From: Octopus sinensis
Taxonomy: Eukaryota
Assembly: GCF_006345805.1 (NCBI RefSeq)
Contig: NC_043016.1
Span: 15,996,001 to 16,060,000 of the forward strand
DNA length: 64,000 bases
Direction of reading: 5' to 3'
Positions 1,538-41,689 of this stretch are shown here, one piece after another. The stretch's first letter is position 1; each line of letters starts with the position of its first letter. The notes beneath the pieces were generated by a model. The model was not told where the DNA came from. It was given only the letters and a program-made list of their open reading frames with translations, and did not search any database. The position numbers and the translations under genes were made by a program.

Positions 1538-1703
1538 CTGAAAAGGGGGGAAATTAGTATTTATTACAAAGTAAAACATTCATTGCTTTATAAGAAACAT
1601 TAAATGTTAGAAAAATAAACATATTCCTTGTGGGTCTCATTTATTTTCTGTCTTTTAATGATTTGCAACAAAGACATGTACACTCCAACACACACACACA
1701 CAT

Positions 1704-2000
1704 ACCATCATCATCATCATCATCATTTAGCATCTGCCTTCCATGCTGGCATGGGTTGGACAGCTTTACAGGAGCCAGCCAGGTAGAAGACTACACCAGG
1801 CTACTGTGTCTGTTTTGGCAGGGTTTTTATGGCTGGATGCTCTTCCTAACACCAAATGCTTTTTACATGGCAACAGCACAGGTGAGGTCTGTTTTGGCAG
1901 GGTTTTTACAGCTGGATGCCCTTCCAAATGCCAACCACTTCACAGTGTGTTCTGGATGTTTTTTTACGAGTCACCAAGTAACTTGCAAGACAAGGAATTT
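1704..2000 (-). repeat. RTE-tail short repeat with (CAT)n tail; other copies at ~3755-3830, 10170-10320, 16660-16775, 20835-21010, 31590-31755, 33690-33870, 37040-37120
   Basis: Recurrent catcatcat..ttaacgtcc..ttccatgctggcatgggttggac...ctggatgcccttcc motif, identical in kind to the RTE 3' end at 40410. Confidence 0.8.
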
Positions 2001-6268: not shown

Positions 6269-6341
6269 AGAGCTTTGGCACAATGGATAATGCATCTGAC
6301 TACAAATCAGAAGAGTCTGGGTTCAACCCCTGGCAAGATCA
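6269..6341 (+). pseudogene. tRNA-Arg(ACG) pseudogene or tRNA-derived repeat; anticodon decayed to ACA
   Basis: 73-nt colinear match to the recalled tRNA-Arg-ACG sequence (TGGCGCAATGGATAACGCGTCTGACTACGGATCAGAAGATTCCAGGTTCGACTCCTGGCAGGATCG), with CG changed to CA/TG. A T7 run at 6347-6353 resembles a Pol III terminator. Confidence 0.8.
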
Positions 6342-9437: not shown

Positions 9438-12185
9438 CTAATTAAGAAAAAGAAAACCAATTAATTAAAATAAACATACATTGCTTATAAAGCAAAAGTT
9501 GGTGTTGTTTAAATCAAATTATCCAACTTTCAACAAAACTGTAAAACACGTGCATTGAAGCTGATTTATCATCAAGTACAAAGCTTAATTTTGGTACTTT
9601 GATGATTGGCTGAATTTAAAACTAATACAAAATTTTGCTGTTGTAATTAAACAAGAGCAGAACAACATATTTCATCATCATTACTTTCTGACACCAGTAG
9701 TCTTTCTCACTAACCCACTTGACATCCATCTTTCTTTCTTAATACTCTCCTTCTCCACTATCATTTTACATTGATCTCCCTTCTGTCCAAACAAATTATT
9801 TTCCCCTTTCTCTTATCTATCCACTCACCCTTCATGTTCTGCCTCCACTCACCCCTATTCACCAATTCATCGCTAATTTTTTTTTTATTTCTTTCTACCT
9901 CCAATTACTCTCCTTTTTCTTGTCACCTAGTATACTGTACCCCTACTGTACCCCAACGCAGATCTTAGCATTGCAAGCTAACTAGTGCTGGTGAAAAAGA
10001 AAGGAGAAAAAGCAGCACCTAATACACTCTAAAGTGGTTGGTGTTAAGAAAGATGTCCAGCCATAGAAACCATTCCGGAAGAGACAATGGAGAATGATGC
10101 ATTGGACTTATCGAATCCTGTCTAACCATCCATCCCATGCTACCACAGAAGACATCATCATCATCATTTAATATCCCCTTTTTTCCATGTTGGAAAGTTG
10201 AACATGAACTGACAAACCAGGGGGCTGTGCCAAGCTCTAGTGTCTGCTTTGGCAGGGTTTCTACAGCTGGATACCCTTCTCAATGCCAACCAATTCACAG
10301 AATGTACAAAGGGTGCTTTTAACCTGATATGTTAAAAGGTCAGAAAGTACCTACAAAATCAGATTCCTCAATTGAGTGTGGTGTAGTATTATGGGATAAG
10401 AAAGTGTGACAAAGGGGCAGGAAAAGGTGAATGGATGACTTGCCCACCTGGAAAGTGAGAGAGAGACGTGAGGTCAAGTTGCATGGTGAATATGTGAGAG
10501 AGAGAGAGAGAGAGAGAGAGAACAGGATGGAGGGAGAGGAAAAGGTGGGTGAGTGGGTTAGAGTGTGACAGATGATAAGATGTGGGAACTGAAGTGGAAG
10601 CAGTGAATATCAGAGAGGGGAAGTGAAAGAAAGGAGATAGGAACGGGTCAGGGAGGAGTAGGTGACAAGTGTTAGCAGTAGAGAAAAACATGTGTAAAAT
10701 GATGATATTAGGGAGAGAAAGGAAACAGTTGGAGATGTAATATGTTTTTTCTCTTCTTTGCCTCACAACATAATGCCAATGGGTCTTTTGCATTGCACAT
10801 CCTTATGGATGCAGGGACCACAATCCTCCTCAGTTGGTCTACCTTGTTTGGCTAGGCCACTATGTACAGTCTAGATTGCAATTGTTTAAATCAATCCTGG
10901 TACTAAACTGGTGCCTATTGTAACAACTTCAAAAACTTACAGGTAAAGTCAAACCAGTGAAACTTGAACTTACTCAGAAAATGAAAGGCTGAAACTTAAC
11001 ATCAAAAGATATTCTCGTCTGATTCTGCCAATTAATTACCATCTCTTGTAGCCTCTTGGTGATTCTTATTTGAGAAATAGATACGTGAAGTCTCTAACTC
11101 ACTTGACTAAATCTTGGATTTCTAATTTGTTCAATGAAAACAAAAACTCTATACTTGAATATCGACATAGCTCTTGAACTAATCTATCCCCCTCCGTGTA
11201 GTTTTACAATTAGATGAAACAGATGGGTATGTAATTAACAAGCAACACAGCTTTTCGGTCAGTAATTCTGCTGATTATTAATTATCTGGATATTAGATAC
11301 ACACCTGTCAGTTGAAAAAAGAAAACCCCAAAAAACCCTTAATTCTTTAAAAGGAATAGCTGGACTAACAGAGATTACCTATTAAGTTGATTACCAAAAC
11401 TAAATTCAAAATTTGAAAACTAAAATTTTTTTTTTAAAGTCCACCACCTACCTTTAACATTTAAACTGCCAATTTCCAGCCTAAATATTCAACCTGTTTT
11501 AAGTCTAAACTGACCAAATCTGGCCTCACTGGTGCTACTCTACAATCAGCATTTAAATTAGATATTTCTGGCCCAGATATCCGATTAGTTTTATGGTTAA
11601 ACTGGCCAGATCTGGCCTCTTACACTTACTCTACAGTGCCATTCTCAAAATAATGACATCATCAAGATCTCAAAGCTATGAGATTAATTCAAAACAATAT
11701 GAATAAATAAGCATTTTATTTGAACAAGTAATTTAAATGCTACAGTGTTAATGGTCTTCACAAAGATTACAGTAGCAACTGCGAACTTTGCATAGCTTTA
11801 GACTTTGGTAAGGGGAGAAAAAAAAATTCCCATTGGTTACTCATTGGTCACTGCAGGATATGGCAGTATTTGCAAACCAGAAACCTGGTTTTAATTGGAA
11901 TTAACCAAATGAAATCTCTACTTCATGTTTTCTTCTTTATATTGATAGCAATCAGATGAAATCTGACAAATTTGTCTTTGTCTTGAAAACATTAATAAAA
12001 GTATATTTCTTTGTAGAAAGACTAGATTTTATTATGTTACCTAATTGCCTTCTACATTCAGTACTGTCATTTTCCCCCATGCTGTTTCAAACAAGTTTTA
12101 TGAGACACACTAATTTAACAGTAAACGATTTATTGAAATGCTTCACATACACAATTACATAATTTCAGAAAAGTTTTAATCTTAC

Positions 12186-12291
12186 TTGTATTCGAGGCAC
12201 CACTTTTTCTAGACATTCTGTAGAACCAGATTTCAAAAGGTCAGGTAAATTGTTAACTACACTGAGTTGTTGGGATTCATTTCGGGCACAT
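12186..12291 (-). CDS. PPP4R4: PPP4R4 coding exon, 106 nt
   Basis: ttttccag acceptor, gtaaga donor. CARNESQQLSVVNNLPDLLKSGSTECLEKVVPRIQ versus recalled human AGQDVQGTSVIANLPFLMRQNPTETLRRVLPKVR. Phase-0 end fits the next exon. Confidence 0.88.
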
Positions 12292-16551: not shown

Positions 16552-16587
16552 CGTAGAAAGTTCACTGAATTCTTTTTGTCAATTTTA
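16552..16587 (-). CDS. PPP4R4: Candidate 36-nt phase-2/phase-2 small exon of PPP4R4
   Basis: ttattatttag acceptor and CG|gtgagt donor. Encodes KIDKKNSVNFL(R), loosely like human SDIERAVYLLS. Joins 55479 and 12291 in frame. Confidence 0.45.
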
Positions 16588-17131
16588 CTAAATAATAATA
16601 CTTGTCTAACCAACAGAGACCAACACCAATTGGGAAGTTAACCAAACTATAAGCTGTAGAAACACTGCCAGATCAGACTGGAGCCTGGTGCAGCCTTCTG
16701 GCTTCCCAGATCCCCGGTCGAACCATCCAACCCATGCTAGCATGGAGAACGGACATTAAACGATGATGATGATGATAAGGTTCAGGTAACTAAAAATATG
16801 GTAAGAAATAACAAATCTTTACAAAATAAAATGGTTAGTTTAAATCACAATATTAATTATGGTTTGGTGAAATCAAGGGAATAGTTCTAATGTGAAAGAT
16901 AACTTATATATTATGCTCTATTTAGTTACTTTGGTCTTCTCAGGCTGATGATTAAATCAATCATTCAATATATATATACTATATATATATATATTACTTA
17001 TATATTGATCATTCATTTTTATACTTTTTGAGATCTAGTTATATATTTTATAAAAATATATTCTATTTGTTATTTATGTTTTGGTTTATGTCTATCACTG
17101 AGTTGCATAATAGTGGTTTTATCTCATATAT

Positions 17132-17165
<34 letters not shown>

Positions 17166-17329
17166 ATAATAAATATTAGGGAATATATCCAATTTACAGG
17201 GAAAAAAAATCAGATTTAGGATTAAATCCAATTTTATAGTAAAATATTATAAAATATTATTTGAGACAAAACCACTATTTTGCAAAACAACAAGGAAAGA
17301 CTTAATCAATACATAAAATTTAATAAATA

Positions 17330-19135
17330 GTCAAAAAAAACCGCCACTACAATCGTTTCTTGTCTTGATCGACAATCTTCAGGTGGACTTCCAATCTAAA
17401 AAATCAAAATTTTAAAATATAAAATAATACTTTTAAATAATTAAAGTATAAATGAAAAAATATAAGTATATAATCCATATATAACCTATATATAATCCAT
17501 ATCGAAAATATAGACTAATTACCACGAATTCCCTAAAAAAACCATGATAAAACAAAACTCTTAAAAACATATAACGATAAAATCTCCCTTTGCTAAACTC
17601 TATAACAAACCTATAAAGTAAACCCCCTAACCTAAACATTCACACACAAATACACACACGTAAACCACAGACTCACGACTTATACACATACCTATACTAA
17701 CTTATAAACCTCAATATACACCAAAAACCACTCCCTCCCCACACAGACAAATTAACACATACATCCCAAAACCTAAATAACAAACCCATATACACATTCA
17801 CACACAAAACACACACTCACACGCAAAACACTCACACACAAAAGATACATATACTCCCTCACATATACGCCTATACATACTCACTAAAACTCGACATATA
17901 CAACAATACTTACACACCCACAAAAAACATTATATACATTTATGAGCTTTAACTCACCTTAGCATCTCTAACAAACAACTTGCAGTAACCCAATCCCATT
18001 CTCTATGCCTACCTCACTACTACACTATTCCATTCACATTCCAAGCAACGCTAGTCCACCACCCGGTTATTCACGTGGCAAAACGAACACCACTCAAAAA
18101 TTATGAATGAAACAATGTAAAAAAATAACCAACACCTAAAATAGACAAAATACCACGAATTACCTAAAAAAACCATGATAAACCAAAACTCATAAAAGCA
18201 TATAACGATAAAATCTCCCTTTACTAAACCCTATAACAAACTTATATAGCAATCCCCCTAACCTAAACATTCACACACAAAAAACCCACACGTAAACCAC
18301 AGACCCAGACTTATACACAACCTATACTAACTTATAAACCTCAATATACACCAAAAACCACTCCCTCCCCATACAGACAAATTAACACATACATCCCAAA
18401 TCCTAAATAACAAACCCAAATACACATTCACACACAAACACACACACACGCAAAACACACACACACAACAGATACATATGCTCCCTCACATATACGCATA
18501 TACATACTCACTAAAACTCGATATATACAACAATATTTACACCCACACTCATACAGATAAATAAATTAATTATACAATAAAAACTCACAACCAATCTCAT
18601 ATACATAAACACTCTTATGAAAACAACAATAAATACATCGTAATTAACCAGAATATCAAAATAACATTATGACATAAGGATAAATCAAATACATACTTAC
18701 AATTCAGTTACAAATTATGAAGTGAAATTAGATTCTTAGCCGTTAAAAAACCAAACAAAATTACGTTACCATGGAAATAACTAATGTAAAAAAAGAATAC
18801 GCGCCATAGAAAGTAAACGTCATTCATAGTATGAATGGAGAAATATAATAAATGGAACTAAAAACTATTTCCACGTAGCAAACCAACGCTACTTAAAAAA
18901 AATTTATTATGAATGGATTCTTTAAAAACTATCATGAAAAATCAATTATATACATTTATGAGCTTTAGCTCACCCTAGCAACTCTAACAAACAACTTACA
19001 GTAACCCATACTCAATGCCTACCTCATTACCACCCTAATCCATTCACAATTCCAAGCAACACTAGTCCACCACCCTGTTACAATTCCCAACTCTACCCAT
19101 TCATTCACAATTTCAACGACGTTCCCTTCAACACA
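17330..19135 (+). mobile_element. Penelope-like element relic with internal direct repeats
   Basis: Direct repeats at 17520-17920/18151-18546 and 17929-18064/18945-19075, on a very G-poor plus strand. A degraded GIY-YIG-type C-terminal motif at ~18700-18910 resembles NK.NEL.STC.H.RYL. The hammerhead sits at the left end. Confidence 0.5.
17344..17386 (-). ncRNA. Minimal type I hammerhead ribozyme motif
   Basis: Minus strand reads CCAC-CUGAAGA-UUGUC gaucaa GACAA-GAAAC gauu GUA-GUGG. Both core boxes are present, with a 5-bp stem II, a 4-bp stem I and a GUA triplet. Confidence 0.7.
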
Positions 19136-19407
19136 CACACACACATTCTGAGTTTAAATCCCGCTGAGGTCAACTTTGCCTTTCATCCATTTGGGGTTGA
19201 TAAAATAATAAAGTACGAGTGAAGTACTGGGGGTCAGTGTGATTGACTTGTTCTCTCTCCTCAAAAATGCAAGGCTTGAATCCTACAAGAGACTAGCACC
19301 CTATTCAGAGGAAATGTGATCGGATCAATAATATGTCATAGGAACCAGGTAAGCAATCTTATAAGTTCTAGTTACCAATAAAAAAAAGTATATATATATA
19401 ATGTATC

Positions 19408-20160
19408 ATCATTGTTTAACGTCTACTTTCCACGCTGGCATGGATTGGATGGTTTGACTGAGGTCTGGAAAACCAGTGGCTGCACCAAGCTCCAATCTGA
19501 TCTGGCAAGGTTTCTACAGCTAGATGCCCTTCCTAATGCCAACCACACCGAGAGTGTAGTGGGTGCTTTTTACGTGCCACCGGCATGGGAGCCAGTCAGA
19601 GGGCACTGGCATTGGCTACGTTTGGATGGTGCTTTTTATGTGCCTCTGGCACAGAAGCCAGTCAGGTCGACCTGGCATTGATCACGTTTGGATGATGTCT
19701 TTTACATGCCACCTGCACGGGAGTCAGTCAGGGGGTACTGGCATTTGGATGATGTCTTTTACATGTCACTGGAAGGGGAGCCAGTCAGGGGCACTGCCTA
19801 CGTTTGGATGGTGCTTTTTATGTGCCTCTGGCACAGAAGCCAGTCAGGTAGACCTGGCATTGATCACGTTTGGATTATGTCTTTTACATGCCACCTGCAC
19901 GGGAGTCAGTCAGGGGGTACTGGCATTGACGGCATTTGGGTGATGTCTTTTACATGTCACTGGAAGGGGAGCCAGTCAGGGGGCACTGGCCACTGCTATG
20001 TTTTTGGTTTTACTTGACTCAACAGGTCTTCTCAAGCATATCATATTGCCTGACGCATCAAAGGTACTTTTAAATGGGCTGGACATGCAACACTGGCATC
20101 AGTCATGGCTGCAATCTCACTTTAGTTGCTGGGTCTTCTCAATCACAGCATATCTCCAAA
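19408..20160 (-). mobile_element. RTE 3' UTR fragment with expanded ~60-bp tandem repeats
   Basis: Same terminal motif as 40410-40570, plus seven units containing gccagtcagg...ttttacatg at 19563-19990. Confidence 0.75.
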
Positions 20161-21988
20161 GCTAACCCTAATTTTCACCTTTAAAGGTATTTTAATATGT
20201 TGGCCACTTGGTGAAATTTTTGAAAAAAATTTTATCCTATATTAGAAGCAAATATATATATATATTTCGTTTTTGTATTTGGCTTGCAAGATTCTTTATA
20301 TGAGTTCATGTGTTGAAGCACATTATGTTGTGTCTGGGGCGCAAAAAGAAAATGACTCTCCCCAGATGCAACAGTATATATATATATATATATAGGAAAT
20401 AGTGACACAACAAGGCACCAATATTTGCTGGAAATAACAGTCGATAACTGTATGATGCTATGTAAAGCTTCACTAAATGTATAGAGGCAAAGAAGATGTG
20501 TGCGGATGGTGAGCATAAAAAATTTTGTCTTACTTCTAGGAAGAATGCTAGATAAATGGACACCCTAGAATGGATAACCTAGTACTCGAGTTTCGGACTT
20601 TCCAGAATACGTTATCATAAATCTGGTTAGTTTTCTTCAGCTAGGTTCATTGAAGACAAAATTTAAAATATCCGCTACATAAATGCCAGTATATTTGGCT
20701 GATATGCCTAGCCACAAACAGAACTGAGATCAGTGAAAAAGCTTTATGTAAAAATTATAAATAGTATTGCAATACAATGGTATTATTTTCCAGCTAAAAA
20801 AATCGTAAAGGTAGAATTCTTATATATATATATCATCATCATCATCATCATCATTTAGTGTCCGTTTTCCATGCTAGCATGGGTTGGACGGTTCTACTGG
20901 GGTCTGTGAAGCCAGAAGGCTTCATCAGGCCCAGTCAAATCTGGCAGTGTTTCTACGGCTGGATGCCCTTCCTAACGCCAACCACTCCGTGAGTGTAGTG
21001 GGTGCTTTTTACGTACCTTTTTTAAACCTATCAGTCTCTTTTGCTGAACCACTAAGTTACGGGGATGTAAATACATGAACATAGGTTGTTCAGTGGTGAT
21101 GGGAGGTGGGGTGGCATACACACAGACACATGCGATGGGCTTCTTCCAGTTTCCATCTACCAAATCCACTCACAAGGCTTTGGTTGACCCAAAGTTACAG
21201 TAGAAAACATTTTTCCAAGGTGCCAAGCAGTGGGACTGAACCCAGAACTATGTGGTTTGGAAGCAAGCTGCCTACTAACACACACAAAAATCTCACCAAT
21301 GCAAGGAAACTGAAAAATCATGCCTTTTTGAAACAAATTCCCTTGAGACATTACTTAGCATTTAGTTGATGAATGGGGCCCTATTATAAACCCTGTAATT
21401 AATGATGCTATTGCTTGTTGATTGCAATTACTGAATGTATCCTTTTTGTTTATCTTCATTACAACAGAATGTAATTTGGTAGATAATTAGCTGCTTTATC
21501 ATGCAGGTCATTTTTCTTTCTTTTATTTTTAAGTTTTTAATTTAAATGAGCAAAAGCAGTTTCCACCATTTTAAATTGATACAAAACAAGTATGGAATTG
21601 GAAATAATTAATCATCAATTAAACATTTTGTAAATAGTCCAATAATTGGCTGTGTCGTTAAGAAACTTGCTTTGCAATCATGTGATTTTGGTTTTAGTCC
21701 TACTGTGCTGCACCTTGGGCAGTTGTCTTCTACTCTAGCCCTGGATTGAGCAAAGCCTTGTGGTGGATTTGGTGAATGGAAACTGTGTGGAAGCCCATCA
21801 TATGTGTGTGTGTGTTTTGTGTTTGTACCTTCCTACCACTTGAGAACAGGTTGTTGGTTTGTTTATGTCCCTGTAACTTAGTGGTTTGGCAAATGATAGA
21901 GTAAGTATCAAACCTAGAATAAAAATACTGGGTCTGATATGTTTGACTAAACCCTGGCATGGCTGCAATCCAATGATAAAAGAATAAT

Positions 21989-22254: not shown

Positions 22255-23305
22255 GTAGGGGTTCACCAAGGATCAGTCCTTAGTCCCCTCTTATTCAACA
22301 GAGTCCTCCAGGCAATAACAAAGGAATTCAAGACAGGATGCCTCTGAGAGCTCCTCTATGCTGATGACCTTGCTCTAATAGCCGAGTCACTGCCAGAAGT
22401 ATAGACGAAGTTTAGGGGTGGAAACAAGGTCTAGAATTGAAGGGCCTTAGGGTTAACCTAGCAAAAACCAAAGTCTTAGTAAGTAGAGAGGCTGACAAAT
22501 CATAAAACCCTTCAGGTAGATGGCCCTGCTAAATCTGTAGGAAAGGCATGGGTAGAAACTCCATAACTTGTACCTGGCATAAGCTATGGACACATAAAAG
22601 GTGCAGCAATATCAAAGAAAGGTTAACCAGGAAGATAGCTTTTGTGTGTGGCAGATGCACAGGGGCAATAAACACCGAAAATGTACAGATTCCATCACAT
22701 GCCAAGGGGAAAAACTAGAAGTAGTTAATAGCTTCTGCTAGCTAGGTGACCAAGTCTGTAGTGGAGGTGGTTGCTCTGAGAGTGTAGCGACTAGAGTAAG
22801 AATAGCCTTGGTAAAGTTCAGGGAGTTCCTACCTCTGCTGGCAACTAAGAGCCTCTCACTCATGATGAAAGGTAGACTGTATGATGCATGTGTGCAAACT
22901 GCCATGCTACATGGAAGTGAAACATGGGCCATGAATGCTGAGGACATGTGTAGGCTTGAAAGAAATGAAGTTAGTTTGATCCGCTGGATGTGTAATGTCA
23001 GAGTGCATACATGACAGAGTGTAAGTGCCCTGAGAGAAAAGTTGGACATAACAAGCAGCAGATGTGGTGTGCAAGAGAGGCAACTGTGCTGGTATGGTCA
23101 TGTGTTAGGTGTGGATGAGGAGAGATGTGTGAAGATATGCCGCACCCTAACAGTGGAAGGAACATGTGGAAGAGGTAGACTGAGGAAGATATGAAATGAG
23201 GTGGTGAAGCATGTCCTTCGAACATTGGGCTTCACAAAGGCAATGACAGGAAACCAGGACCTTTGGAGATACACTGTGATTGAGAAGGCCCAGCAACTAA
23301 AGTGA
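22255..23305 (+). mobile_element. RTE-clade LINE, 5'-truncated reverse transcriptase remnant
   Basis: VGVHQGSVLSPLLF ... ELLYADDLALIAE ... MLHGSETWAM ... WYGHV ... GTCGRGR motifs, with stops and frameshifts. Confidence 0.92.
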
Positions 23306-24695: not shown

Positions 24696-26589
24696 GGTTA
24701 ATATAGGGCGTAACAAATATCAGAAAATCAAAAAAAAAATGTGTGTAATAGGTGTAAAACAACTTCCTATGAACGAATATGAAAAAAAAAAATTCGCGCA
24801 CGCGAAAGGGGGGTGGGGGAGAGGCCTCAGAAAATTCACATCGGGAAGTTCCGAAAGCGTCTGAAGGGCTGACCCGGGCACCAAAACAAAAAAAAATAGT
24901 GTAATATGTGTAAAACAACTTGCTCTAAACGAATATGAAAAAAAAATGCGCTCTCGAGAAGAGGGGTGGGGGAGAGGCCTCGGAATATTTATATCGGGAA
25001 TTTCCGAAAGCGTCTGAACCGGGCACAAAAACAAAAACAGCGTAATAGGTGTAAAACAACTTGCTCTAAACGACTATCATGAAAAAAATGCGCGCTCGCG
25101 AAAGGGGGGTGGGGGAGAGGCTTCGGAAATTTCACATCTTCAGTCCACGGCCTTTAAACTAAGAAAAAATAGTGTAATTGGTGTAAAACTACTTGTTCTA
25201 AACGAGTATCAAGAACACACATGAATCATAAACTCCGTATTTCGCAAAAAAAAAAATAACAGAAGAAATTCTGGAAAAAGTGAAGAAATGTTGGATCTCC
25301 GCCATGTGAATCAAAATACGTGTCAGAACATCTTGAAATACTACAGAAATTATGTTACGAAAATGATAATGTATACATACCTCTTTGAGTGGTCCATCGA
25401 TAATGATGATAAAGAAATGAGTTGGATTTGAACTCAGAATATTGACTAACACAACTACATACTACAAGACTCAAAATATTCAGCCAAGTCACCACCCTTT
25501 AACTAGCAATAATAATAACATCAATAACATAACAGCCAAAAGATTTATTTGTTCTGAAAATAACAATCATAGTAAATAAATATGTTCTTTAATATTCACA
25601 TTCATGTGCACAGTTAAACACACTTACATACAAACAGTCACGCATGCATAATACAGAACGGAACACATAAATGAAGGATGCATTACTTAGTATATATTAC
25701 ATCTAGAGAATTTTGATTAATAAGTCAAATATGCAAATTATAAAGATAATTAATTGCTTTACTAAACAGTGTTGTAAAGGTGAAAGAATAAATTTGGGAA
25801 AAAAATACACGCCAAAACTAATTAATAAGGATAATTAGGGAAGGATTGACACAAAATAATAATTTTTTCTGTCTCTTTTTTTCTGATAAATGCATCTTAA
25901 TAAGTGAGAAGAATTGCATATATCTGAACTATTTCAAAGAAAAGCATAAATTTAATGTTTAAAATAGCTTTACCAAGGAATGAGATCCAACATTTCTTCA
26001 CTTTTTCCAGAATTTCTTCTCTTTATTTATTTTTTTTTGCGAAATACGGAGTTTATGATTCATGTGTGAGTGTGTGTTCTTGATACTCGTTTAGAACAAG
26101 TAGTTTTACACCAATTACACTATTTTTTCTTAGTTTAAAGGCCGTGGACTGAAGATGTGAAATTTCCGAAGCCTCTCCCCCACCCCCCTTTCGCGAGCGC
26201 GCATTTTTTTCATGATAGTCGTTTAGAGCAAGTTGTTTTACACCTATTACGCTGTTTTTGTTTTTGTGCCCGTTCAGACGCTTTCGGAAATTCCCGATAT
26301 AAATATTCCGAGGCCTCTCCCCCACCCCTCTTTCTCGAGAGCGCATTTTTCATATTCGTTTAGAGCAAGTTGTTTTACACATATTACACTATTTTTTTTT
26401 TGTTTTGGTGCCCGGGTCAGCCCCTCAGACGCTTTCGGAACTTCCGATGTGAATTTTCCGAGGCCTCTCCCCCACCCCCCTTTCGCGTGCGCGAATTTTT
26501 TTTTCATATTCGTTCATAGGAAGTTGTTTTACACCTATTACACACATTTTTTTTTGATTTTCTGATATTTGTTACGCCCTATATTAACC
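24696..26589. mobile_element. Foldback-like element with ~600-bp inverted arms built from tandem ~130-150 bp subrepeats
   Basis: 24696-25299 is the reverse complement of 25982-26589 (ggttaatatagggcgtaacaaat ... atttgttacgccctatattaacc). The spacer is non-coding. Confidence 0.85.
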
Positions 26590-30225: not shown

Positions 30226-33200
30226 GAAGACAAGGAACGTGTGCTGGTGTGATGGCTTCAGAATATACCTGTGCATCATCAATGGCAGTATGCTAAGATT
30301 CCACGGAGGAGATGTTAACAACAGATGGATTTTCTGACTGACAAAACTTGTTTCTACAAGATATGAAAGAGCTTGTACTCTGACCTGATCAATGCTTCCT
30401 GTCACAAAGCATGATGGACAGGGGAAACAAATGAAGTGAGGAAGGAACGAACCACATGTTTGCCCAACCTTTCAAGAACAACCTCCTTTGATTTAATTTC
30501 TGAGCAAGAATGGTTACCCTGCTCAAAATCTCTTTCCAGTTTTTCTCCACCAGGAGGCAAGTACCTTAAATGGGCCTTCTGTTCTTCAAATGCTGGGCTG
30601 CAAGTTCACCAGCTTATTCTGAGATTACAGCTCAATCAAAGAGACAAGCTTCAATAATCCCTGCTAGCATGCATGATGGTGTTGGTGTTATGGGAACAAG
30701 TTTAGGGCGGGTTCAGACATATGCTAGCATTAACAATACATCCCTCAACTTTTGTGTCAAAAAAATGGCCAATGAACAATCTTGTAGCTTACAAATCAAC
30801 TGTGATTCCTCTTTGAATCAGATGTTTACCAGCTCTTCTACTTTACCAAAGGTAATGTAACTTATCTAAAGTGTCACTTGGATGAGACCCTCCCACATTT
30901 GTTGGTGACAGCCACCATTTGTTCCTACTTAACTTGCTTAATCCATTTAACGATGATGATGATAATTAGGAGAGAGAAATGAAATGCTTTAATAGTCAAG
31001 CTTTTCACAGAAAGTAAAAATAACTTCTGTGATTGGTAGTACAATGCAGTAGGAAATCGTCAGGTTAGCTGTGATCAAAGGCATTTCAGTAGTGATCACT
31101 GTTTTATTATCACATGTAAGGTACATCTAGGACTACATTATTCAATGTGACTTTCCCTTTTTAAGATAACAGGGTGAGATTATTGGGAGTTTTGACTGCC
31201 ATTTCTAGCAGGTTAAACAACCACATAAATTCATAGAAATTAACTATGATGCACAAAAGCTAATTGCTATGTGGCATTTAATTGAAGATTAAGCATTATT
31301 AACCACAAAGTCAGCCTCAGCCTCGACTCAAAGATACCAATACAAATAGAAATAATACTGATTTTAATCATTGATGGAAGGACACAAATTATAGGAGAGG
31401 AGGAGATTGACACAATGATATTACTGGTTTTGGTTTTACTGACTGTGAAAAGATGAATGGCAAAAGTGATGTCAAAATTTCAACTAGGAACCAGGAGGGA
31501 CAATTCTAAATGCTACAAACTTATTCGCTCCCATACACTTAATGTCTGAAATTAATTTACTGAATATATGTCATGTCAGTGGCACGTAAAAGCACCCATT
31601 ACACTCTTGCAGTGGTTGGTGTGAGGAAGGGCATCTAGCCGTAGAAACCATGCCAAATCAGACTGGAACTTGGTATAGCTCTTTGGTTCATCAGCTCCAG
31701 TCAAACCATCCAACCCATGCCAGCATAGAGAGTGGACATTAACTGATGATGATTCCTACAAGTTATTGTGGTTGCTTTATGGATATAGATCAAGTGAACT
31801 GAACTCAATGCACAAGTATTTATTACTTTAATCAGTCCTGGAAATAATGTCAAACTAGAGCAATATTTAAACACAATACTGTTAAACAACCAAACTAGGG
31901 TGAGCGGCTACCGTGTCTGACACACAAACACCAAGTCATCTAACAGACACAAGGTCTCAGATTCTGGAGGAAAGGAACGGTTGATTTCATACCACAAGAC
32001 GTCCAATCTAAGTTCTTGAAGTTGATTTCATCAACCTCAGTACTCCATTTCATTGATCCCCAGAAGGAAATGAGATGAAAAGTTGACCTTGGAAGGACTT
32101 GAACACAGAATGTAAAGTACTGTAACTAAACATTCAGATTTTGTTCACTGCTCTAATGATTGTACAAGGCTAGACATTTTAATGTTAGGATAGAGTTATA
32201 TTAGCCTGAGGATTTAACTGGTAATTTCATAGAGCATGAAAAGATGGAAGGTACAACTGATCTCAACAGGATTTGAACTGAAAGTCTAAAGAGGCTACAG
32301 ACTTATAGAGAAATAGTAGAGTCCATTCAAAATCAACGTCAGTGCAATATCCAGTAGCATAGCCTGGTTCTAAAGTTGGGGGGAGTGAGCACTTAGAACA
32401 AAACAAAAGGCAACGTGACACATACCACACAATTTTTAACTCATTTCTCTTGTATTACATGAAATATTTCATTAGTAATAATAAACATAAATTCATTAAT
32501 TTTATGTTTCACTAACAATGTCATTATGGATTAAACTTACAACTACTGATATGTGATGTGAAAATAATGAAATTCAATGGATTGTCCAGTGTTGAGAGGT
32601 TATGACATCAAGGTTTGTTTTGGTTCTTCAGATGTCAGTGCCCATCAACACATTGCAGGAGATGGAGCTGACAGTTCAGAAGTTGGTCAAATAAAGTAAC
32701 GACTCCATAAAGTTCTTCCAAGGTCATGCAATTAGCGAAAAAAAGAGATTCAACTTTTATTGCACAATTGAACTAAAGAGTTAAAAAGCAAAAACTGTTG
32801 AAAAGGCACCAATTTTGAAAAAATGTGATCAGGTGGGGAATGGTCAGTCCCCTTGCTCCCCCTACACCACTGACAATATCCTGGTGGGATTCGAGCTGAG
32901 AACATAAAGGAATATGACTAAACATGGCATTACCATTTCTGCAATTTACTGTCTTCTACAACAATAACAACAGCAACACTGCCACCATCTATAAAGGACA
33001 AGCCTGAAGCATTCTCATGGAATCTTGACTGTCTGGGATTAACAGCTCAACTCAATATAAAAGATCTTTCAAAAGACACAGAATTCGAGTTGTTTACACA
33101 TAAACCATGGCCCTTACAACCTAGAGCCAATGTTAGAGCTGTATTAAGCGAGATTTCATTTCATAAGGGACAATACGGCCATGCCTCCACACAGCCCCCA

Positions 33201-36200
33201 GCCTGCATCTGATGCCAAGATCCACACTTTGATTGGGAGCTTTCTACATTTGACTATAAAAGGGATCAAACATTTTGAAGCTGAAGACTTTCAACATTTG
33301 GGATGTTTTAACACAGAAAGCATTCTATATAACACTTCAATATATCCACCACCTGACACCCAGGTAACAATAATGATTTGCATTCAACTGAAAAGTCATA
33401 AAAAGAGCATCTACATTTTTGATCAATTTGCTAGAAATAGCAGCTAAATCTCCTTTAAATTACACTTTTTCCTATCTTTGCATTTATTAGACAATAGCGC
33501 AAGGTTGTCCTTTTTAGGCTTTTTGTTTTCCGCCTGACTGGCACCAGTGTTGGTGGCATGTAATAAGCACCATTCAAGCATGGGTCAAGCTAGTGCCGCA
33601 TGACTGGCTGCCTGTGCCGGTGGCATGTAAAAAGTACCACATGAATGTAGTCAATACCAGTGCCCCTGACTGGCTCCTAAGGCAGTGGCTTGTAAAAAGC
33701 ACCCCCTACACTCTCGGAATGGTTGGTGTTAGGAAGGGCATCCAGCTGTAGAAACCTTGCCAAATCAGATTGGAGCCTGGTGCAGCCTCTTGGCTTGCCA
33801 ATCCCCAGTCAAACTGTCCAACCCATACCAGCATGGAAAAACGGACGTTAACGATGATGATGATGATGACTGATACAACCAAGACATTGCTCCAGTCAGG
33901 GTATCATTTCATCTGGAAGTGGAAGCTTCTTACCCTCAACCGGATCCCACTGCAGTAAAATTTCAATTCAGAATGAAAAGAACTGCAATGGATACTGTAA
34001 GACACCGTCTGACAATATAACAACTTAGTTAATCCACTGAGCTGGATCAATACTTTATTGAGCCAGAAAAGATGAAAAGCTGAGTTGACTCAGTAGCATT
34101 TGAACTCAAGACTATAAACAACCAGAACAAATGCCACAAAACACAAACAATTTGTCATCTTTTTTTTTTTAAATAACACCTACCATTATAAGGGGGGTGG
34201 AGGTGCTGCATAACATAGTCCTATGTATCATGTCTTAAAAAAAGATGGGATGGCCACATGTGGAATATCTTTGATCACTGGATCAGGACTGACCTGGGGG
34301 CTAATCAACAGTGACTATAATCACTAGTACTAACAACTATACTATACATTAGATAATGTACTCCTAGGTACACTATATTTGAAGAATACAAGATGGGATG
34401 GTCACAGCTGGAATGTCAATGATTAAGATTTGCTTGATCAGGACTGACCTGGGACTAAACAACAATAGTAGCAATAGCCACTAGCATTAACTAGTACAAA
34501 CTACTATACATTTGATAATGTAGTCCTAGATACACTTCGTCTGAGTAAAAGACAGAATGGTTACAGCCGGATTAGCACTGATCTGCAGCTCAACAACAAC
34601 AACAGCAACTAACGGTAACTTATTACTAAGCATTAGTGTAGTTCTACATACATTACACACACACAATAAAATATAAATGGTCAGCTGAATTAGAGAGGGA
34701 GAGTAAACAGTAAGAAAAAACATTAGATTTACATCCAACTGACCACCACCATTAACAGGGACAAAACCTGGATTTAAAACACTGGATGATGATGATGATG
34801 ATGATGAAATCTGCTAATTCAAACATTCTCTTGAACTGCTCCTTACTTGTGCTCCCTGGTAAACAATCTAGGATGTCCTTACTAAAACTGTCAGTCTTCA
34901 GAACGAGCAGTTTAGGTGGGGTTTTTTTTCTCCATGTCTTTCATGTTAAGGAGGCAGCAATATATAAATAAAAAAAATGATAATAATAATAGACTGCAGA
35001 GGAAGCATGGAGACAATCTTCCATTCAGTTATTACACACCTTCCTTTGATGTTTTAAACATCTACAAGGGTTGTGAATATGCATGGCTTAGTTTACTCCC
35101 TGGGAACAATTTACAGTTTGTATCATGGGTGGGGAACAGATGACATTAGAAACAGAAAAACACACACATACACACATGGAGGACTAAAGATAAATACTCA
35201 TATACACACTGGAATAAACAAACACACACACACACATTATCAGAAAGAGATATAAGCAGGTATGCATTAATATAAAGACAGGTACATACATGCACGCACT
35301 GGTATAAAGAGATGATGTACATGCACACTAGCTTAAAGGGGCATTTGGTTGCTATTTCTCTCAGGTCAATCAACTATGGAGTGTTTGGTTTTGTCTTTGA
35401 CAATGTGACTCATTCTTCTGACTTAATCTCTAAGGAAGGTGTTCTAGAGAGGAATGTGTACAGTTAAAGAATCAACAACCAATAAAGTTGAAGAACTTCC
35501 AATCAAAATTCTTCATCAAAATATTTCTGACTTGAATTATCAATTGGAAGGTTATAATCCAAATCCAAGAAAAATCTAACTCAAAAGAAATGGTCACTCA
35601 AATCTAAATAAATTCTATGCTTACAATAAGAGCCAAACAATGAGGCTTGTACTAATTAAAATATCGTTAAATTGCTAAGTGGTTAACTGGTTAATCCTAT
35701 ATTATAGTTTAATAAATCGGAATTAACACACAGGTTTGTGGAACACAATTGAGACTAACAAAATTATTATTAAATGATTTAAGCAACATTATTATTGCTG
35801 AAGAAAAATATTAACTAAAGCTTAGGATTAAAAACTTATAAAAAAAAACCATTTCTATTCTGAAAGAAATTCTATACTTTTCTATCATTTTGTATTCAGT
35901 AACAAGTTTTGGTGCCAAAAAACAATATGATAATGCTTATCTCAAGGAATGCTGTATAGCAAGGGGTGGAGGAGCCATTCCACTGCCAGGGGGAATAGCA
36001 AGTGCCATAAGAACTTGTGAGGTCTTATCTGTTTTTGAGGAAAACAATGAATCTTTAATTTTGTTAATAGGTAAGCATCTTATATTAAACTCCTGTTCTG
36101 GTCTTAAAGGATTAACCATTTTGCTTTTTTTCTTCTTTTATATTTATTTTAGAGACTATGTCAGCATGCCAATTTAAAAATATATTTAGGTTAAATTTTA

Positions 36201-38362: not shown

Positions 38363-40409
38363 TTCTAAATAGTTAGGGTATAAATAATCAGAGTGAGGAG
38401 ACAGCGCAACTACAGACCAGGTTGGTGAGAGAGAGAGAGAGAGAGAGAGTCTTGGTCAAGATCAAGATCTATGTACAATAAGTGGTATTGCAGTTTTAGA
38501 CATGTGGGTAGGATTCCTTTGTGGACCTTAAAATTAAAAAATAATAGGTCAAAAGTAATTTTTTAAAAATTCTGAACAGGAAAGTTAGTCTTTGTGATGC
38601 AGTTTTGGTTATCTGAGAGTAAAATCACTACAGGAGATCACTTTGAGGGTAATGGTTGTGTGTATACACAAAAATGAGAATATGGTTTCAGTAATATGAA
38701 CCAAATGACTGTGTTTGGCATATATTGCCATTGAAGGATATTACAGGTATGGTATTGGCAGGATGTTTCAGACATGATGTTGCTGTAGGAGATTCTAGCA
38801 TTTATCTGCTTATTCTTTTGTTTCAGTCATTGAACTACGACTATGCTGGAGCACCATCAATTAAACAGATCCCAGAACTTATTCTTAAAACAGCTACTTT
38901 TTTTTTGTTGATGTATTTTTACCAATCCCCTATTTTATGAAGATGTAAACAAACCAACACCCGTTGCCAAGCAGTAAAACAAATACAGACTCACAAAAGA
39001 GTTTCCAAACAATTTCCCACAAGGCATTAGTCAAACCAAGACTATAGTAGAAGACCCTTGTCCTAGGTGTCACATAGTAGGACTGACCTTGAAATCATGT
39101 GGTCCCAAAGTGAACTTCTCAACAACACACTGATGGAGACCTGAGGTTTTTAGTTGTGTGTAGTCTAAAAGTAGAGAGGATGATACAGGAGACTATTTCA
39201 GTGACATGTGCTGTCAATATGTCTGTTCTATTGAGAGGCACTGAAACATTATGTTCCCATTGGAGGATGTTTTTACTCAGTACAATTGTGTGAAATGGTT
39301 GATGTCAGGAAGGGCATCCAGCTGTAAAAGCCACGCCATAAATGGAATGTATGAATGAGTGTATTTCATCTAAGGGTGAGTAACTCCAACTAAAATTTAA
39401 TTCATACCTTCGTTAATTCATCCACTCCATTCCAATAGATGTAAAATAACGATCAGGATATTTAATAAATTCCCTGTCCATCAAATATGGTAAGTACAGA
39501 AGACCAACAACTGTTGTAGGATGACCGAGTCCATTTTTAACTAATTCCATTTTGGCTACCAAAAAAATACAGAAATATACTGGACAGTGGAGAAAGTGTA
39601 CATGTCCAGGCTGACACTCTAGTTGCGTTTAGCTTAGCAGTCAGCCCTAATCAAGAAGAGTTTTGATCACAGTCACTCCACCTGTGAACACCACATCTAT
39701 CCCTACATTATTCAATGAGTTTTGGTATTTTAAAATGTCGATATGAAATTCAAAAGATATTTGTCCACTATGTCTTGTAGATCATGAGACCACGTAGAGG
39801 TTTCCTTAATGGTCCATAAAATTGTTATGAATTAAAAATAAACTAAAGAAATCAAGGAAATATCATCATCATCGTTAACATCAGATAGGGAGAATTATGA
39901 AATTAATTAAAAAAAAAAAAACAGTATGTTATGGGTGGAGACAAGGTGGATAATTCTAATAGTTTCTGATTATATATATGATGGCTGTCCACTCATGACC
40001 AAGGAAGACCATCACTGATCATGAGGTTATTGCATCAGCAGTTGGCTTCTCCTGAGTTCACATTTGCAGCTCCAATGCTCACCTTGGAGCCCTTCCACTT
40101 GACCAGGTATTGGATAGTTGCCTTGCTGCTGACTGCACAACTTTCACCTAGAGACATGCTTTAACAAAAGCTAAGGGATGCTTCACTCACAGTGGTCTTC
40201 CAGCACTGAAGACCGCCATCTGGACTTTGAGACCTGTGCATATATATATTCTCACTGTTTATTTCCTTTTTGTTGAAGAGCTTAGGCTCGAAACAAAAGA
40301 CTTTCTCACCTTCCTGAGCTTTAAACTAATACATCTGTTTGTTGTTTATACACCTGTCTTCGTTTTTTGTTTTTCTGTAAATTCCAATTATATATATATA
40401 TATATATAT

Positions 40410-41407
40410 CATCTTCATTGTTTAATGTCTCCTTTCCATGCTGGCATGGGTTGGACAGTTTGACTAAAGACTGGTGAGCCAGAGGCTGCACAGGCTCAAA
40501 ATGATCTGGCAAAGTTTCTACAGCTGGATGCCCTTCCTAACGTCAACCACTCCCAGAGTGTAGTGGGTGCTTTTTAAGTGCCACCGGCAACGACCACGCT
40601 CGAATGTTGTTTTCTGCGTGCCACCAGCATATGAGCCAATCCGTGGCCCTGGCAATAATCATGCTTGGATGTGCTTTTAACATTCCACTGGCATGAGTGC
40701 TAATCAGGCGGTACTGTCATCAGACGTGCCAGCAATTTTGGTTTGTTTATACTTGCCTTAATAGGTCTTCGCAAGCAAAGTTCATTGTCCAATGAATGAA
40801 GGATACACATAAGTGACCCAGTTACACACTACATTCGAATGTGCTTTTAACGTTCCACTGGCACTGGTGCCAATCAAGCAGTACTGTCATCGGTCGCATC
40901 AGCAATTTTGATTTTGATTTCACTTGCCTCAACAGGTCTTCACAAGTAAGGTTTATTGTCCAATGTATGAGGGGTATTCATAAATGAGCTAGTTACACCC
41001 ACTGGCATAGGTCATGGGCTATGGTCTCACTTGGCTTGTCGGGTTTTCTCAAGCACAGCATATCTTCAAAGATCCCGGTCACTAGTCATTGCCTCGGTAA
41101 GGCCCAATGTTTGAAGGTCGTGCTTCACCACCTCATCCTAGGTTTTCCTGGGTCTACCTCTTCTACAAGTTCCCTCAACTGCTAGGGTGTGACACTTTTT
41201 CACACAACTGTCCTCATTCATTCGCAACACATGGCCATACCAGCACAGTTGTCTCTCTTGCACACCACATCTGATGCTTCTTTGGTCCAACTTTTCTCTC
41301 AGGGCGCTTACACTTTGTTGTGTATGCACACTGACATTAAACATCCAGCGGAGCATACTGGCTTCATTCCTTGCAAGCTTACACATATCCTTAGCAGTCA
41401 TGGCCCA
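40410..41407 (-). mobile_element. RTE LINE 3' fragment (RT C-terminus plus 3' UTR and ATG-repeat tail)
   Basis: ORF 41138-41401: ARNEASMLRWMFNV...WYGHVLRMNEDSCVKK...GRPRKT, same family as 22255-23305. The 3' end reads ...ccaacccatgccagcatggaaagg...atga. Confidence 0.88.
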
Positions 41408-41689
41408 TGTTTCACTGCCATGCTACCTTATATATATATATGTATATATATACACACCTACACATACATACACATATCACATCACAACACACTACCCACA
41501 CATACATATACACACACGTCCAGACCACCAGCCCCCTTTCACACGCACGCACATACTCTCTCATACACACACGCACCTTTGTGTTGGGGGCACCTTCGTA
41601 TTGGAAGTCACTTGACCTTGTTATCTCCCCTACTGTCCCTCTCGCGTCTGACCATTGTCTGAAGTCAGGATGCCATGATAGATCGTTAA

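What the first reader, a model, noticed from the sequence alone, without database searches (positions are those of the whole stretch)
17344..17386. Apparently intact minimal hammerhead ribozyme, sense to the PPP4R4 pre-mRNA
Seen on the minus strand: stem I CCAC/GUGG, core CUGAAGA, stem II UUGUC/GACAA with a 6-nt loop, GAAAC, a near-palindromic stem III (ACGAUUGU, one change from ACGAUCGU) and a GUA cleavage triplet, predicting a cut between 17348 and 17347. Known: Penelope-like elements carry minimal hammerheads with short palindromic stem III that are thought to cleave as dimers. Inference: this copy is transcribed within PPP4R4 intron 1, ~760 nt upstream of the candidate 36-nt exon, so cleavage could affect splicing. 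Caveat: the base pair closing stem II is U-A rather than the usual G-C.
Basis: partly seen in the sequence, partly recalled or inferred. Interest (0 to 1): 0.75.

Follow-up and report, generated by a model that had tools for sequence, protein, structure and literature searches.

The report
Orphan hammerhead-like motif in an intron
A 43-base stretch in the 5' part of a PPP4R4-like gene of a mollusc-like animal really does spell out a minimal hammerhead ribozyme, but it is a lone, weak, atypical copy with no relatives in reach, so it is probably an inert retroelement relic or a chance look-alike, not a working switch for the gene.

Summary
On the minus strand, 17386..17344 reads CCAC|CUGAAGA|UUGUC-GAUCAA-GACAA|GAA|AC-GAUU-GU|A^GUGG. 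All hammerhead core bases are present, with helices of 4, 5 and 2 bp. The predicted cut lies between 17348 and 17347. It is the only descriptor hit in the window. PPP4R4-like exons lie downstream on the same strand, so it is sense to the gene.

Chance expectation depends on how many features are counted. It is about 0.006-0.01 per 64-kb window for a relaxed descriptor. It falls to about 1.5e-5 (0.6 per 2.5-Gb genome) if a 5-bp helix II and a self-complementary helix III are required.

Evidence against a working ribozyme:
- No Rfam hammerhead model matches, even at E<=10 on 59 nt.
- The helix II closing pair is U-A, not the conserved G10.1-C11.1.
- No loop-loop contacts are recognisable.
- The fold is no more stable than shuffles, and its predicted share in native context is about 1e-5.
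- Helix III needs a dimer, and no second copy exists in the window.
- I found no Penelope-like element (PLE) ORF, no paralogue, and no counterpart in two other PPP4R4 loci.

Verdict: either a solitary, near-inert retroelement-type minimal hammerhead (about 0.5) or a chance match (about 0.4). A splicing role is unsupported (about 0.06). Interest is low.

The parts
17344..17386 (-). Hammerhead-consensus motif, type I topology (open helix I). The 43 nt read CCACCUGAAGAUUGUCGAUCAAGACAAGAAACGAUUGUAGUGG.
   Evidence: Sequence. It is the only descriptor hit in the window.
17376..17382 (-). Core box C3 U4 G5 A6 A7 G8 A9 (CUGAAGA).
17360..17375 (-). Helix II, 5 bp (UUGUC/GACAA), with the 6-nt loop GAUCAA. 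The closing pair is U10.1-A11.1 instead of G-C.
   Evidence: The hallmark comparison is with PMC4209133.
17357..17359 (-). Core G12 A13 A14.
17349..17356 (-). Helix III, ACGAUUGU: 2 bp (A15.1-U16.1, C15.2-G16.2) capped by GAUU. The 8-mer is self-complementary if two G-U pairs are allowed.
   Evidence: Cofolding of two copies gives the double-hammerhead form at -21.4 kcal/mol, against 2 x -6.5 for the monomers.
17347..17348 (-). Predicted scissile bond, 3' of A17 (17348) and 5' of G1.1 (17347).
   Evidence: Follows from the hammerhead numbering applied to the sequence. Cleavage was not tested.
16552..16587 (-). Candidate 36-nt micro-exon (..tag|TAAAATTGACAAAAAGAATTCAGTGAACTTTCTACG|gtgagt). It joins in frame to the exon at 12290.
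   Evidence: Similarity to the homologues' '..AVYLLSSGQ..' segment is weak, so the exon is plausible but unproven.
12186..12290 (-). First clearly recognisable PPP4R4-like coding exon (CARNESQQLSVVNNLPDLLKSGSTECLEKVVPRIQ). Further exons follow at 9437-9288, 4348-4277, 1540-1439, 896-789 and 377-135.
   Evidence: tblastn. Database hits named PPP4R4.
17507..19080 (-). Two-copy tandem repeat directly upstream of the motif in the gene's sense. 17507-17921 matches 18138-18548 at 92%, and 17922-18069 matches 18937-19080 at 86%. It holds no hammerhead copy, and the homology stops at about 17507.
17126..17176 (.). (TA)n microsatellite about 170 nt downstream of the motif in the gene's sense.

Best explanation
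The motif is most likely a solitary copy of the retroelement-borne minimal type-I hammerhead class: short helix I, and a 2-bp palindromic helix III that only becomes stable when two copies pair. This is the kind carried by Penelope-like elements (PLEs) and related repeats in invertebrates. It sits in sense orientation in the 5' region of a PPP4R4-like gene.

In this setting it is expected to be inert or nearly so. As a monomer, helix III is too weak. No second copy in the window can form the double hammerhead. The U10.1-A11.1 pair removes the guanine that normally helps hold the catalytic metal ion. The U-rich flanks outcompete the ribozyme fold. It is therefore expected to pass through the pre-mRNA as ordinary intron sequence.

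Shown: the sequence architecture, the strand, the lack of partner and paralogue in the window, and the fold energetics. Inferred: the retroelement origin and the lack of activity.
For: - The full core and three helices are present, and this is the only hit in the window.
- With a 5-bp helix II and a self-complementary helix III, the architecture is expected by chance only about 1.5e-5 times per window, or 0.6 times per 2.5-Gb genome.
- A 4-bp helix I and a palindromic helix III are hallmarks of PLE minimal hammerheads. Most such motifs occur as single scattered copies, and single motifs show no cleavage in vitro (PMC4209133).
- A 2-bp helix III capped by a tetraloop is called typical of invertebrate type-I hammerheads in PMC7229834.
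- Two copies cofold into the double hammerhead at -21.4 kcal/mol, against -13.0 for two monomers.
- Cephalopod genomes carry hammerheads (235 Rfam Hammerhead_1 hits in the giant squid) and Penelope elements (PMC6962438).
- The motif is a 36-40% GC island in 6-26% GC DNA, next to a tandem repeat and a (TA)n tract. PLEs show an insertion bias for microsatellites (PMC8557442).
- Inertness: the predicted share of the three-helix fold in 83-343 nt of native context is 5e-6 to 5e-5, and the z-scores are -0.7 and +0.27.
Against: - No Rfam hammerhead family matches, even at E<=10 on 5 kb, 131 nt or 59 nt.
- U10.1-A11.1 replaces the 'highly conserved' G10.1-C11.1. Reaching U-A from G-C needs two transversions, so neutral decay of an otherwise intact copy is an unlikely route.
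- There is no bulged base between positions 9 and 10.1, and helix II has 5 bp, not 6-8 (PMC4209133).
- No paralogue of the motif or its flanks exists anywhere in the 64 kb.
- I found no PLE ORF. There is no ORF >=70 aa between 14889 and 19412, no Pfam hit among the ten largest of the 24 ORFs of >=100 aa, and the only RT fragment, at about 22.3 kb on the other strand, looks LINE-like from its motifs as I recall them.
- Scans of viral and metagenome contigs for core plus helix II returned only chance hits.
- The number of real hammerheads in this genome is unknown. The odds against chance rest on my own estimates.
Confidence: 0.5

Rival explanations
1. The motif is a chance match. AT-rich intron DNA happens to satisfy the short hammerhead consensus. 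There is no ribozyme ancestry and no function.
For: - The relaxed descriptor is expected 0.006-0.01 times per window, which is about 240-350 times per 2.5-Gb genome.
- Past searches with relaxed minimal motifs gave mostly false positives (PMC6155905).
- A U-A closing pair is what random AT-rich sequence would give. In the simulation, none of 9 chance hits had G-C at that position.
- The fold is no more stable than shuffles.
- There is no Rfam hit, no paralogue, no partner and no transposable-element context.
Against: Taken together, the intact core, 4-bp helix I, 5-bp helix II and fully self-complementary 8-nt helix III are expected only about 1.5e-5 times per window, or about 0.6 times per genome. 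The palindromic helix III is a hallmark described before this finding, not a feature picked afterwards.
Confidence: 0.38
2. The motif is a working intronic ribozyme. It would cleave the PPP4R4 pre-mRNA about 760 nt upstream of a micro-exon, co-transcriptionally, and so influence splicing or transcript fate, like the conserved intronic hammerheads of amniotes.
For: - The motif is in sense orientation to the gene.
- The core is intact.
- A plausible micro-exon with canonical splice signals lies 757 nt downstream.
- Intronic type-I hammerheads are known in RECK, CTCL and DTNB (PMC6155905).
Against: - The known intronic hammerheads are canonical, with loop-loop contacts, and have their own Rfam families (HH9, HH10). 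This motif matches none of them.
- Helix III has only 2 bp and there is no dimer partner in 64 kb.
- G10.1 is absent.
- The predicted share of the active fold in context is about 1e-5.
- There is no hammerhead descriptor hit in the PPP4R4 loci of two other lophotrochozoans, including about 7 kb upstream of the orthologous exon in L005.
- The upstream exon was not found, so transcription through the site is not shown.
Confidence: 0.06
3. The motif is part of an intronic C/D-box snoRNA. The CUGAAGA box resembles a C box.
For: There is a weak Rfam snoR21 match over 17308-17389 on the minus strand: 21.4 bits, E = 0.57 in a 131-nt search.
Against: The score is far below the gathering score of 45. 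The match disappears in the 59-nt search. There is no CUGA D box in the next 80 nt. CUGAAGA departs from the RUGAUGA consensus at two positions.
Confidence: 0.01

Closest known systems
Minimal hammerheads of Penelope-like elements (Cervera & de la Pena 2014, PMC4209133)
   Same: Type I topology, short helix I (4 bp), very short palindromic helix III that predicts action as a dimer, no loop-loop contacts, and occurrence as a single scattered motif.
   Different: The closing pair is U10.1-A11.1 instead of the conserved G-C. There is no bulged base between 9 and 10.1. Helix II has 5 bp, not 6-8. No pseudo-LTR, RT or GIY-YIG ORF was found nearby, and no family of copies could be shown.
Canonical metazoan type-I hammerheads in retrozymes and satellite repeats (Rfam RF00163; newt satellite 2, Schistosoma Sm-alpha, mussel and coral retrozymes; PMC7229834)
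   Same: Type I topology, and a helix III of 2 bp capped by a tetraloop, as in invertebrate motifs.
   Different: It does not lie in a 170-400-bp tandem repeat with one ribozyme per unit. Helix I has 4 bp, not 6, and has no loop 1. There is no conserved loop 1-loop 2 interaction. It gives no match to the Rfam model.
Conserved intronic hammerheads of amniotes (HH9 and HH10; the RECK, CTCL and DTNB introns)
   Same: Sense orientation, apparently inside an intron of a protein-coding gene.
   Different: The amniote motifs are canonical, active as monomers and conserved across classes. This one is minimal and atypical, and was not found in the two other PPP4R4 loci examined.

Membership tests
Hammerhead ribozyme (general consensus) | Conserved core: C3 U4 G5 A6 N7 G8 A9, G12 A13 A14, the A15.1-U16.1 pair, and H17 (not G) before the cut | tested here: met
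   CUGAAGA, GAA, the A15.1-U16.1 pair and A17 are all present.
Hammerhead ribozyme (general consensus) | Three helices radiating from the core | tested here: met
   Helices I, II and III have 4, 5 and 2 bp. The full three-helix fold evaluates to -5.4 kcal/mol, against an MFE of -6.5.
Hammerhead ribozyme (general consensus) | G10.1-C11.1 pair closing helix II. From established knowledge, not re-read here, the N7 of G10.1 helps form the A9/G10.1 metal site. | tested here: not met
   The pair is U10.1-A11.1. PMC4209133 lists G10.1-C11.1 as highly conserved.
Hammerhead ribozyme (general consensus) | Score at or above the gathering threshold of an Rfam hammerhead model (types I, II, III, HH9, HH10) | tested here: not met
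   No hammerhead family is listed even at E<=10 on 5 kb, 131 nt or 59 nt, nor in the gathering scan of the window.
Hammerhead ribozyme (general consensus) | Covariation in helices I and II across homologues | not testable with these tools
   No homologue was found in the window, in viral or metagenome contigs, or in loci L004 and L005.
Hammerhead ribozyme (general consensus) | Site-specific self-cleavage | not testable with these tools
   This needs in vitro transcription or mapping of RNA ends.
Penelope-like-element minimal hammerhead | Lies in a pseudo-LTR flanking an RT plus GIY-YIG ORF, or in a recognisable truncated PLE | tested here: not met
   There is no ORF >=70 aa between 14889 and 19412. 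The ten largest of the 24 ORFs of >=100 aa give no Pfam hit. A motif grep finds no GIY-YIG and only one RT box, at about 22.3 kb on the other strand, which looks LINE-like from its motifs as I recall them. A short truncated 3' fragment cannot be excluded.
Penelope-like-element minimal hammerhead | [quoted passage not shown] | tested here: met
   CCAC/GUGG gives 4 bp, and the next bases do not pair.
Penelope-like-element minimal hammerhead | Long helix II (6-8 bp) with an unpaired base between positions 9 and 10.1 | tested here: not met
   Helix II has 5 bp and no bulge. The descriptor that allows a bulge gave no better solution.
Penelope-like-element minimal hammerhead | Palindromic positions 15.2-16.2 and loop 3 | tested here: met
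   ACGAUUGU is self-complementary with two G-U pairs. The double-hammerhead cofold is -21.4 kcal/mol.
Penelope-like-element minimal hammerhead | Member of a multi-copy consensus family in the same genome, and/or a second copy within about 50 kb | tested here: not met
   There is no second motif in the window, which extends 17 kb on one side and 46 kb on the other. The genome-wide part of this feature cannot be tested here.
Metazoan retrozyme / hammerhead satellite | Tandem repeats of about 170-400 bp, each carrying a type-I hammerhead with loop 1-loop 2 contacts | tested here: not met
   The neighbouring tandem repeat (units of about 560-940 bp, 17507-19080) carries no hammerhead, and its homology stops 120 nt before the motif.
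Conserved intronic hammerheads (HH9/HH10 type) | Sense orientation within an intron of a host gene | tested here: inconclusive
   The strand matches the PPP4R4-like exons, and a plausible spliced micro-exon lies downstream. No upstream exon was found, so intron status is inferred.
Conserved intronic hammerheads (HH9/HH10 type) | Conservation of the motif in the orthologous intron of other species | tested here: inconclusive
   There is no descriptor hit in L004 (Bulinus truncatus) or L005 (ENA assembly), including about 7 kb upstream of the orthologous exon in L005. These species are distant (56-86% protein identity in the matched exons). Congeners could not be fetched.
C/D-box snoRNA | C box RUGAUGA and D box CUGA brought together by a terminal stem | tested here: not met
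   The snoR21 match scores 21.4 bits against a gathering score of 45. There is no D box downstream.

The most novel reading that the evidence does not exclude
The motif would be a domesticated intronic hammerhead in a mollusc gene that works with a non-canonical U10.1-A11.1 pair. It would work either as a slow monomer aided by host factors or through pairing of two nascent transcripts. By cutting the pre-mRNA upstream of a 36-nt micro-exon it would tune micro-exon inclusion or premature termination of PPP4R4.
Probability: 0.04. Interest if true: 0.6.

Novelty: new member of a known kind. Interest (0 to 1): 0.2.

Why it matters
If it is real and active, it would extend gene-embedded hammerheads from amniotes to lophotrochozoans. 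It would also show that a hammerhead lacking G10.1 can work in vivo, which bears on the debated role of the A9/G10.1 metal site. As things stand, it mainly illustrates how a short consensus can look 'intact' while lacking the peripheral features that make natural hammerheads active. It matters little for understanding the gene.

Tried and rejected
- Rfam at three scales (5 kb, 131 nt, 59 nt), plus the gathering scan of the whole window, gave no hammerhead family.
- The weak snoR21, mir-315 and Hairpin-meta1 matches were rejected as far below threshold.
- I searched the window for a second hammerhead with very relaxed rules: bulge allowed, helix III >=1 bp, helix I >=3 bp, and the U3-A8 core variant. 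The only extra hit is a poor look-alike at 30184 (+).
- Self-BLAST of the motif and flanks against the window found nothing. The repeat homology stops at 17507, and the other repeat unit has no counterpart.
- Exact-pattern scans for core plus helix II in viral and metagenome contigs returned a coding sequence and an unrelated site. These are two distinct sites, one of which (a 60,058-nt contig) turned up in both collections. About 3 chance hits were expected by my rough estimate.
- A look-up of the 68-aa ORF next to the motif, meant to fetch other assemblies of the same locus, found nothing on record.
- The species' own PPP4R4 protein is not in the protein collection; the best hit has 64% identity. 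Orthologous introns of close relatives could therefore not be fetched.
- I looked for upstream PPP4R4 exons by tblastn and by motif search and found none. The weak hit at 44129-43967 is probably chance.
- Supplementary alignments of published PLE hammerheads, wanted for building a covariance model, are not held.
- A full six-frame Pfam scan of the flanks was not run. I relied on ORF lists and motif greps.

Full report
**Observation.** On the minus strand, window 17386..17344 reads CCAC CUGAAGA UUGUC GAUCAA GACAA GAA ACGAUUGU A GUGG. In standard hammerhead numbering this gives:
- helix I, CCAC/GUGG (4 bp)
- core C3-A9, CUGAAGA
- helix II, UUGUC/GACAA (5 bp), with a 6-nt loop
- G12 A13 A14
- helix III, A15.1-U16.1 and C15.2-G16.2, capped by GAUU
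- A17, so the cut is predicted between 17348 and 17347

A descriptor I wrote for type-I hammerheads finds this site and nothing else on either strand of the 64 kb. A much looser version allows a bulge after A9, a helix III of 1 bp or more, a helix I of 3 bp or more, and the U3-A8 core variant. It adds only a poor look-alike at 30184 (+).

**Is it more than chance?** The relaxed descriptor gave the following rates per window:
- 0.01 hits in 300 dinucleotide-preserving shuffles
- 0.009 in 64 Mb of order-2 Markov sequence
- 0.006 by an analytic estimate from base composition

That amounts to about 240-350 chance sites in a 2.5-Gb genome. Requiring helix II >=5 bp lowers the rate to 0.001-0.002 per window. 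Requiring a fully self-complementary short helix III as well lowers it to about 1.5e-5 per window, or about 0.6 per genome. So the bare consensus is not rare genome-wide, but the full architecture seen here is. The palindromic helix III counts as evidence because it was described as a hallmark of animal hammerheads before this finding (PMC4209133).

**Gene context.**
- tblastn with a human PPP4R4 sequence recalled from memory, used only as a probe, found collinear minus-strand exons at 12287-12186, 9437-9288, 4348-4277, 1540-1439, 896-789 and 377-135.
- A database search with the joined exon translations returned proteins that their sources name PPP4R4. The best were gastropod proteins at 62-64% identity, so the source is a lophotrochozoan, probably a mollusc.
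- The abundant SINE-like repeat reminds me of cephalopod genomes. That is memory only and was not tested.
- The motif is therefore sense to the gene.
It joins in frame to the exon starting at 12290. Its similarity to the '..AVYLLSSGQ..' segment of homologues is weak, so it is plausible but unproven.
- I found no exon further upstream in the window. 'Intron 1', and even transcription across the motif, remain inferences.

**Surroundings.**
- The motif is a 36-40% GC island in DNA of 6-26% GC.
- Directly upstream, in the gene's sense, lies a two-copy tandem repeat. 17507-17921 matches 18138-18548 at 92%, and 17922-18069 matches 18937-19080 at 86%.
- The repeat homology stops at about 17507, and the other unit holds nothing like the motif.
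- About 170 nt downstream is a (TA)n tract.
- Neither the motif nor its flanks recur anywhere in the window.
- There is no ORF >=70 aa between 14889 and 19412.
- The ten largest of the window's 24 ORFs of >=100 aa have no Pfam hits.
- The only reverse-transcriptase box lies at about 22.3 kb on the other strand. Its motifs look LINE-like as I recall them.
- So nothing ties the motif to a Penelope-like element (PLE) here. A heavily 5'-truncated fragment cannot be excluded.

**Tests of ribozyme quality.**
- No Rfam hammerhead model (types I, II and III, HH9, HH10) matches at E<=10, whether 5 kb, 131 nt or 59 nt are given. The same Rfam family finds 235 sites in the giant squid genome (PMC6962438).
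- The 43-mer's MFE is -6.5 kcal/mol with z = -0.7 against shuffles. The exact three-helix fold evaluates to -5.4 kcal/mol.
- With 20-150 nt of native flank on each side, the hammerhead fold is 6-7 kcal/mol above the MFE. Its predicted share is 5e-6 to 5e-5, and the context z-score is +0.27.
- Two copies cofold into the classical double hammerhead with an 8-bp helix III, at -21.4 kcal/mol against -13.0 for two monomers. There is no second copy in the window.
- Helix II closes with U-A, not the G10.1-C11.1 that PMC4209133 found 'highly conserved' even though its descriptor did not require it. From established knowledge, G10.1 N7 is a ligand of the A9/G10.1 metal site, so U at this position should lower activity.
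- The bulged base before helix II and the 6-8-bp helix II typical of PLE hammerheads are absent.
- No loop 1-loop 2 contact can be drawn.
- In vitro, single PLE minimal hammerheads showed no cleavage, and dimers showed only weak cleavage (PMC4209133).

**Search for relatives.**
- Exact-pattern scans for core plus helix II in viral and metagenome contigs gave a protein-coding site and an unrelated site, which is about the number expected by chance.
- The ORF next to the motif is not on record.
- The species' PPP4R4 protein is not in the protein collection, so close relatives' introns could not be fetched.
- Two more distant PPP4R4 loci were fetched: L004 (Bulinus truncatus) and L005 (an ENA assembly with a compact gene). 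Neither shows a hammerhead-descriptor hit. In L005 this includes about 7 kb upstream of the exon orthologous to 12290-12186.
- This argues weakly against a deeply conserved intronic ribozyme.

**Weighing.** Two readings remain close.
- For a retroelement-type origin: the full architecture is very unlikely by chance, and it matches two published hallmarks (short helix I, palindromic helix III). Such motifs are numerous and mostly solitary in invertebrate genomes.
- For chance: the closing pair is U-A, which random AT-rich DNA would give and which needs two transversions from G-C. The stems are weak, Rfam is silent, and there is no family or transposable-element context.
- My rough odds depend on the unknown number of true hammerheads in this genome. 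Hundreds to thousands would favour the relic; tens would favour chance.

I put about 0.5 on a solitary retroelement-type minimal hammerhead and about 0.38 on a chance look-alike. I put about 0.06 on an active intronic ribozyme that affects PPP4R4 processing, and about 0.01 on a snoRNA-like reading. The remainder is unassigned. Under both leading readings the motif is expected to be inert in this pre-mRNA.

**Comparison and novelty.** It works, if at all, like the dimer-dependent minimal type-I hammerheads of PLEs and amphibian satellites. Membership of that family is not established: two defining features were tested and not met, and the family-level features could not be tested. At best it is a new, atypical member of a known kind. 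Interest is low unless the genome-wide and cleavage tests listed under next steps come out positive.

Noticed in passing
window 6270-6341 (+): A tRNA-like gene sits inside a PPP4R4 intron, on the strand opposite to the gene. Rfam scores it as tRNA at 36.5 bits. ARAGORN calls it tRNA-Cys with the unusual anticodon ACA. It may be a tRNA pseudogene or a SINE head.
   Followed up: partly
window 24732-25221 and 26068-26559: A perfect 202-nt inverted repeat (25020-25221 against 26071-26272, 100% complementary, 849 nt apart). Its arms are built from 132-156-nt tandem units. It looks like a young foldback-type element or an assembly artefact.
   Followed up: no
window 1702-1977, 10242-10289, 16652-16776, 19391-19585, 20830-21024, 31588-31759, 33663-33869, 40397-40589: A SINE-like repeat family has at least nine copies in both orientations (core ..GGCAGGGTTTCTACAGCTGGATGCCCTTCCTAACGCCAACCAC..). 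One copy lies between the hammerhead-like motif and the candidate micro-exon.
   Followed up: partly
window ~22280-23011 (+) and 41026-41422 (-): There are fragments of a non-LTR (LINE-type) retrotransposon: an RT box ..ELLYADDLALIAES.. (Pfam RVT_1, E = 5e-4) and a C-terminal ORF piece ..HGSETWAM... A second copy, 82% similar and inverted, lies 18 kb away. From its motifs as I recall them it does not look Penelope-like.
   Followed up: partly
window 17507-19080: A two-copy tandem repeat, G/T-rich on the gene's sense strand, has units of about 560-940 bp and a 388-nt insertion or deletion between the copies. It has no coding potential, and its nature is unknown.
   Followed up: partly
window 19562-19990 (+): A tandem array with 66- and 182-nt spacing sits inside or next to a SINE copy. 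It gives long spurious ORFs (..GSQSGGTG.. repeats).
   Followed up: no
window 44129-43967 (-): Two collinear weak tblastn hits match the PPP4R4 segment that the 12290 exon encodes (E = 0.17 at window level, with a frame shift between them). They are probably chance, or possibly a decayed duplicate exon.
   Followed up: partly
window 30184 (+): A U3-A8 variant hammerhead look-alike (TTGAAAA ... GAAA) has a 3-bp helix I and a 1-bp helix III. It passes only the loosest descriptor and is probably chance.
   Followed up: no
L005 2700-3300 (+): In the ENA PPP4R4 locus, the region upstream of the gene holds a roughly 160-nt tandem repeat that reads as a repeated peptide (..LGVSGL*LQFE..SSIEEVPYCF..).
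   Followed up: no
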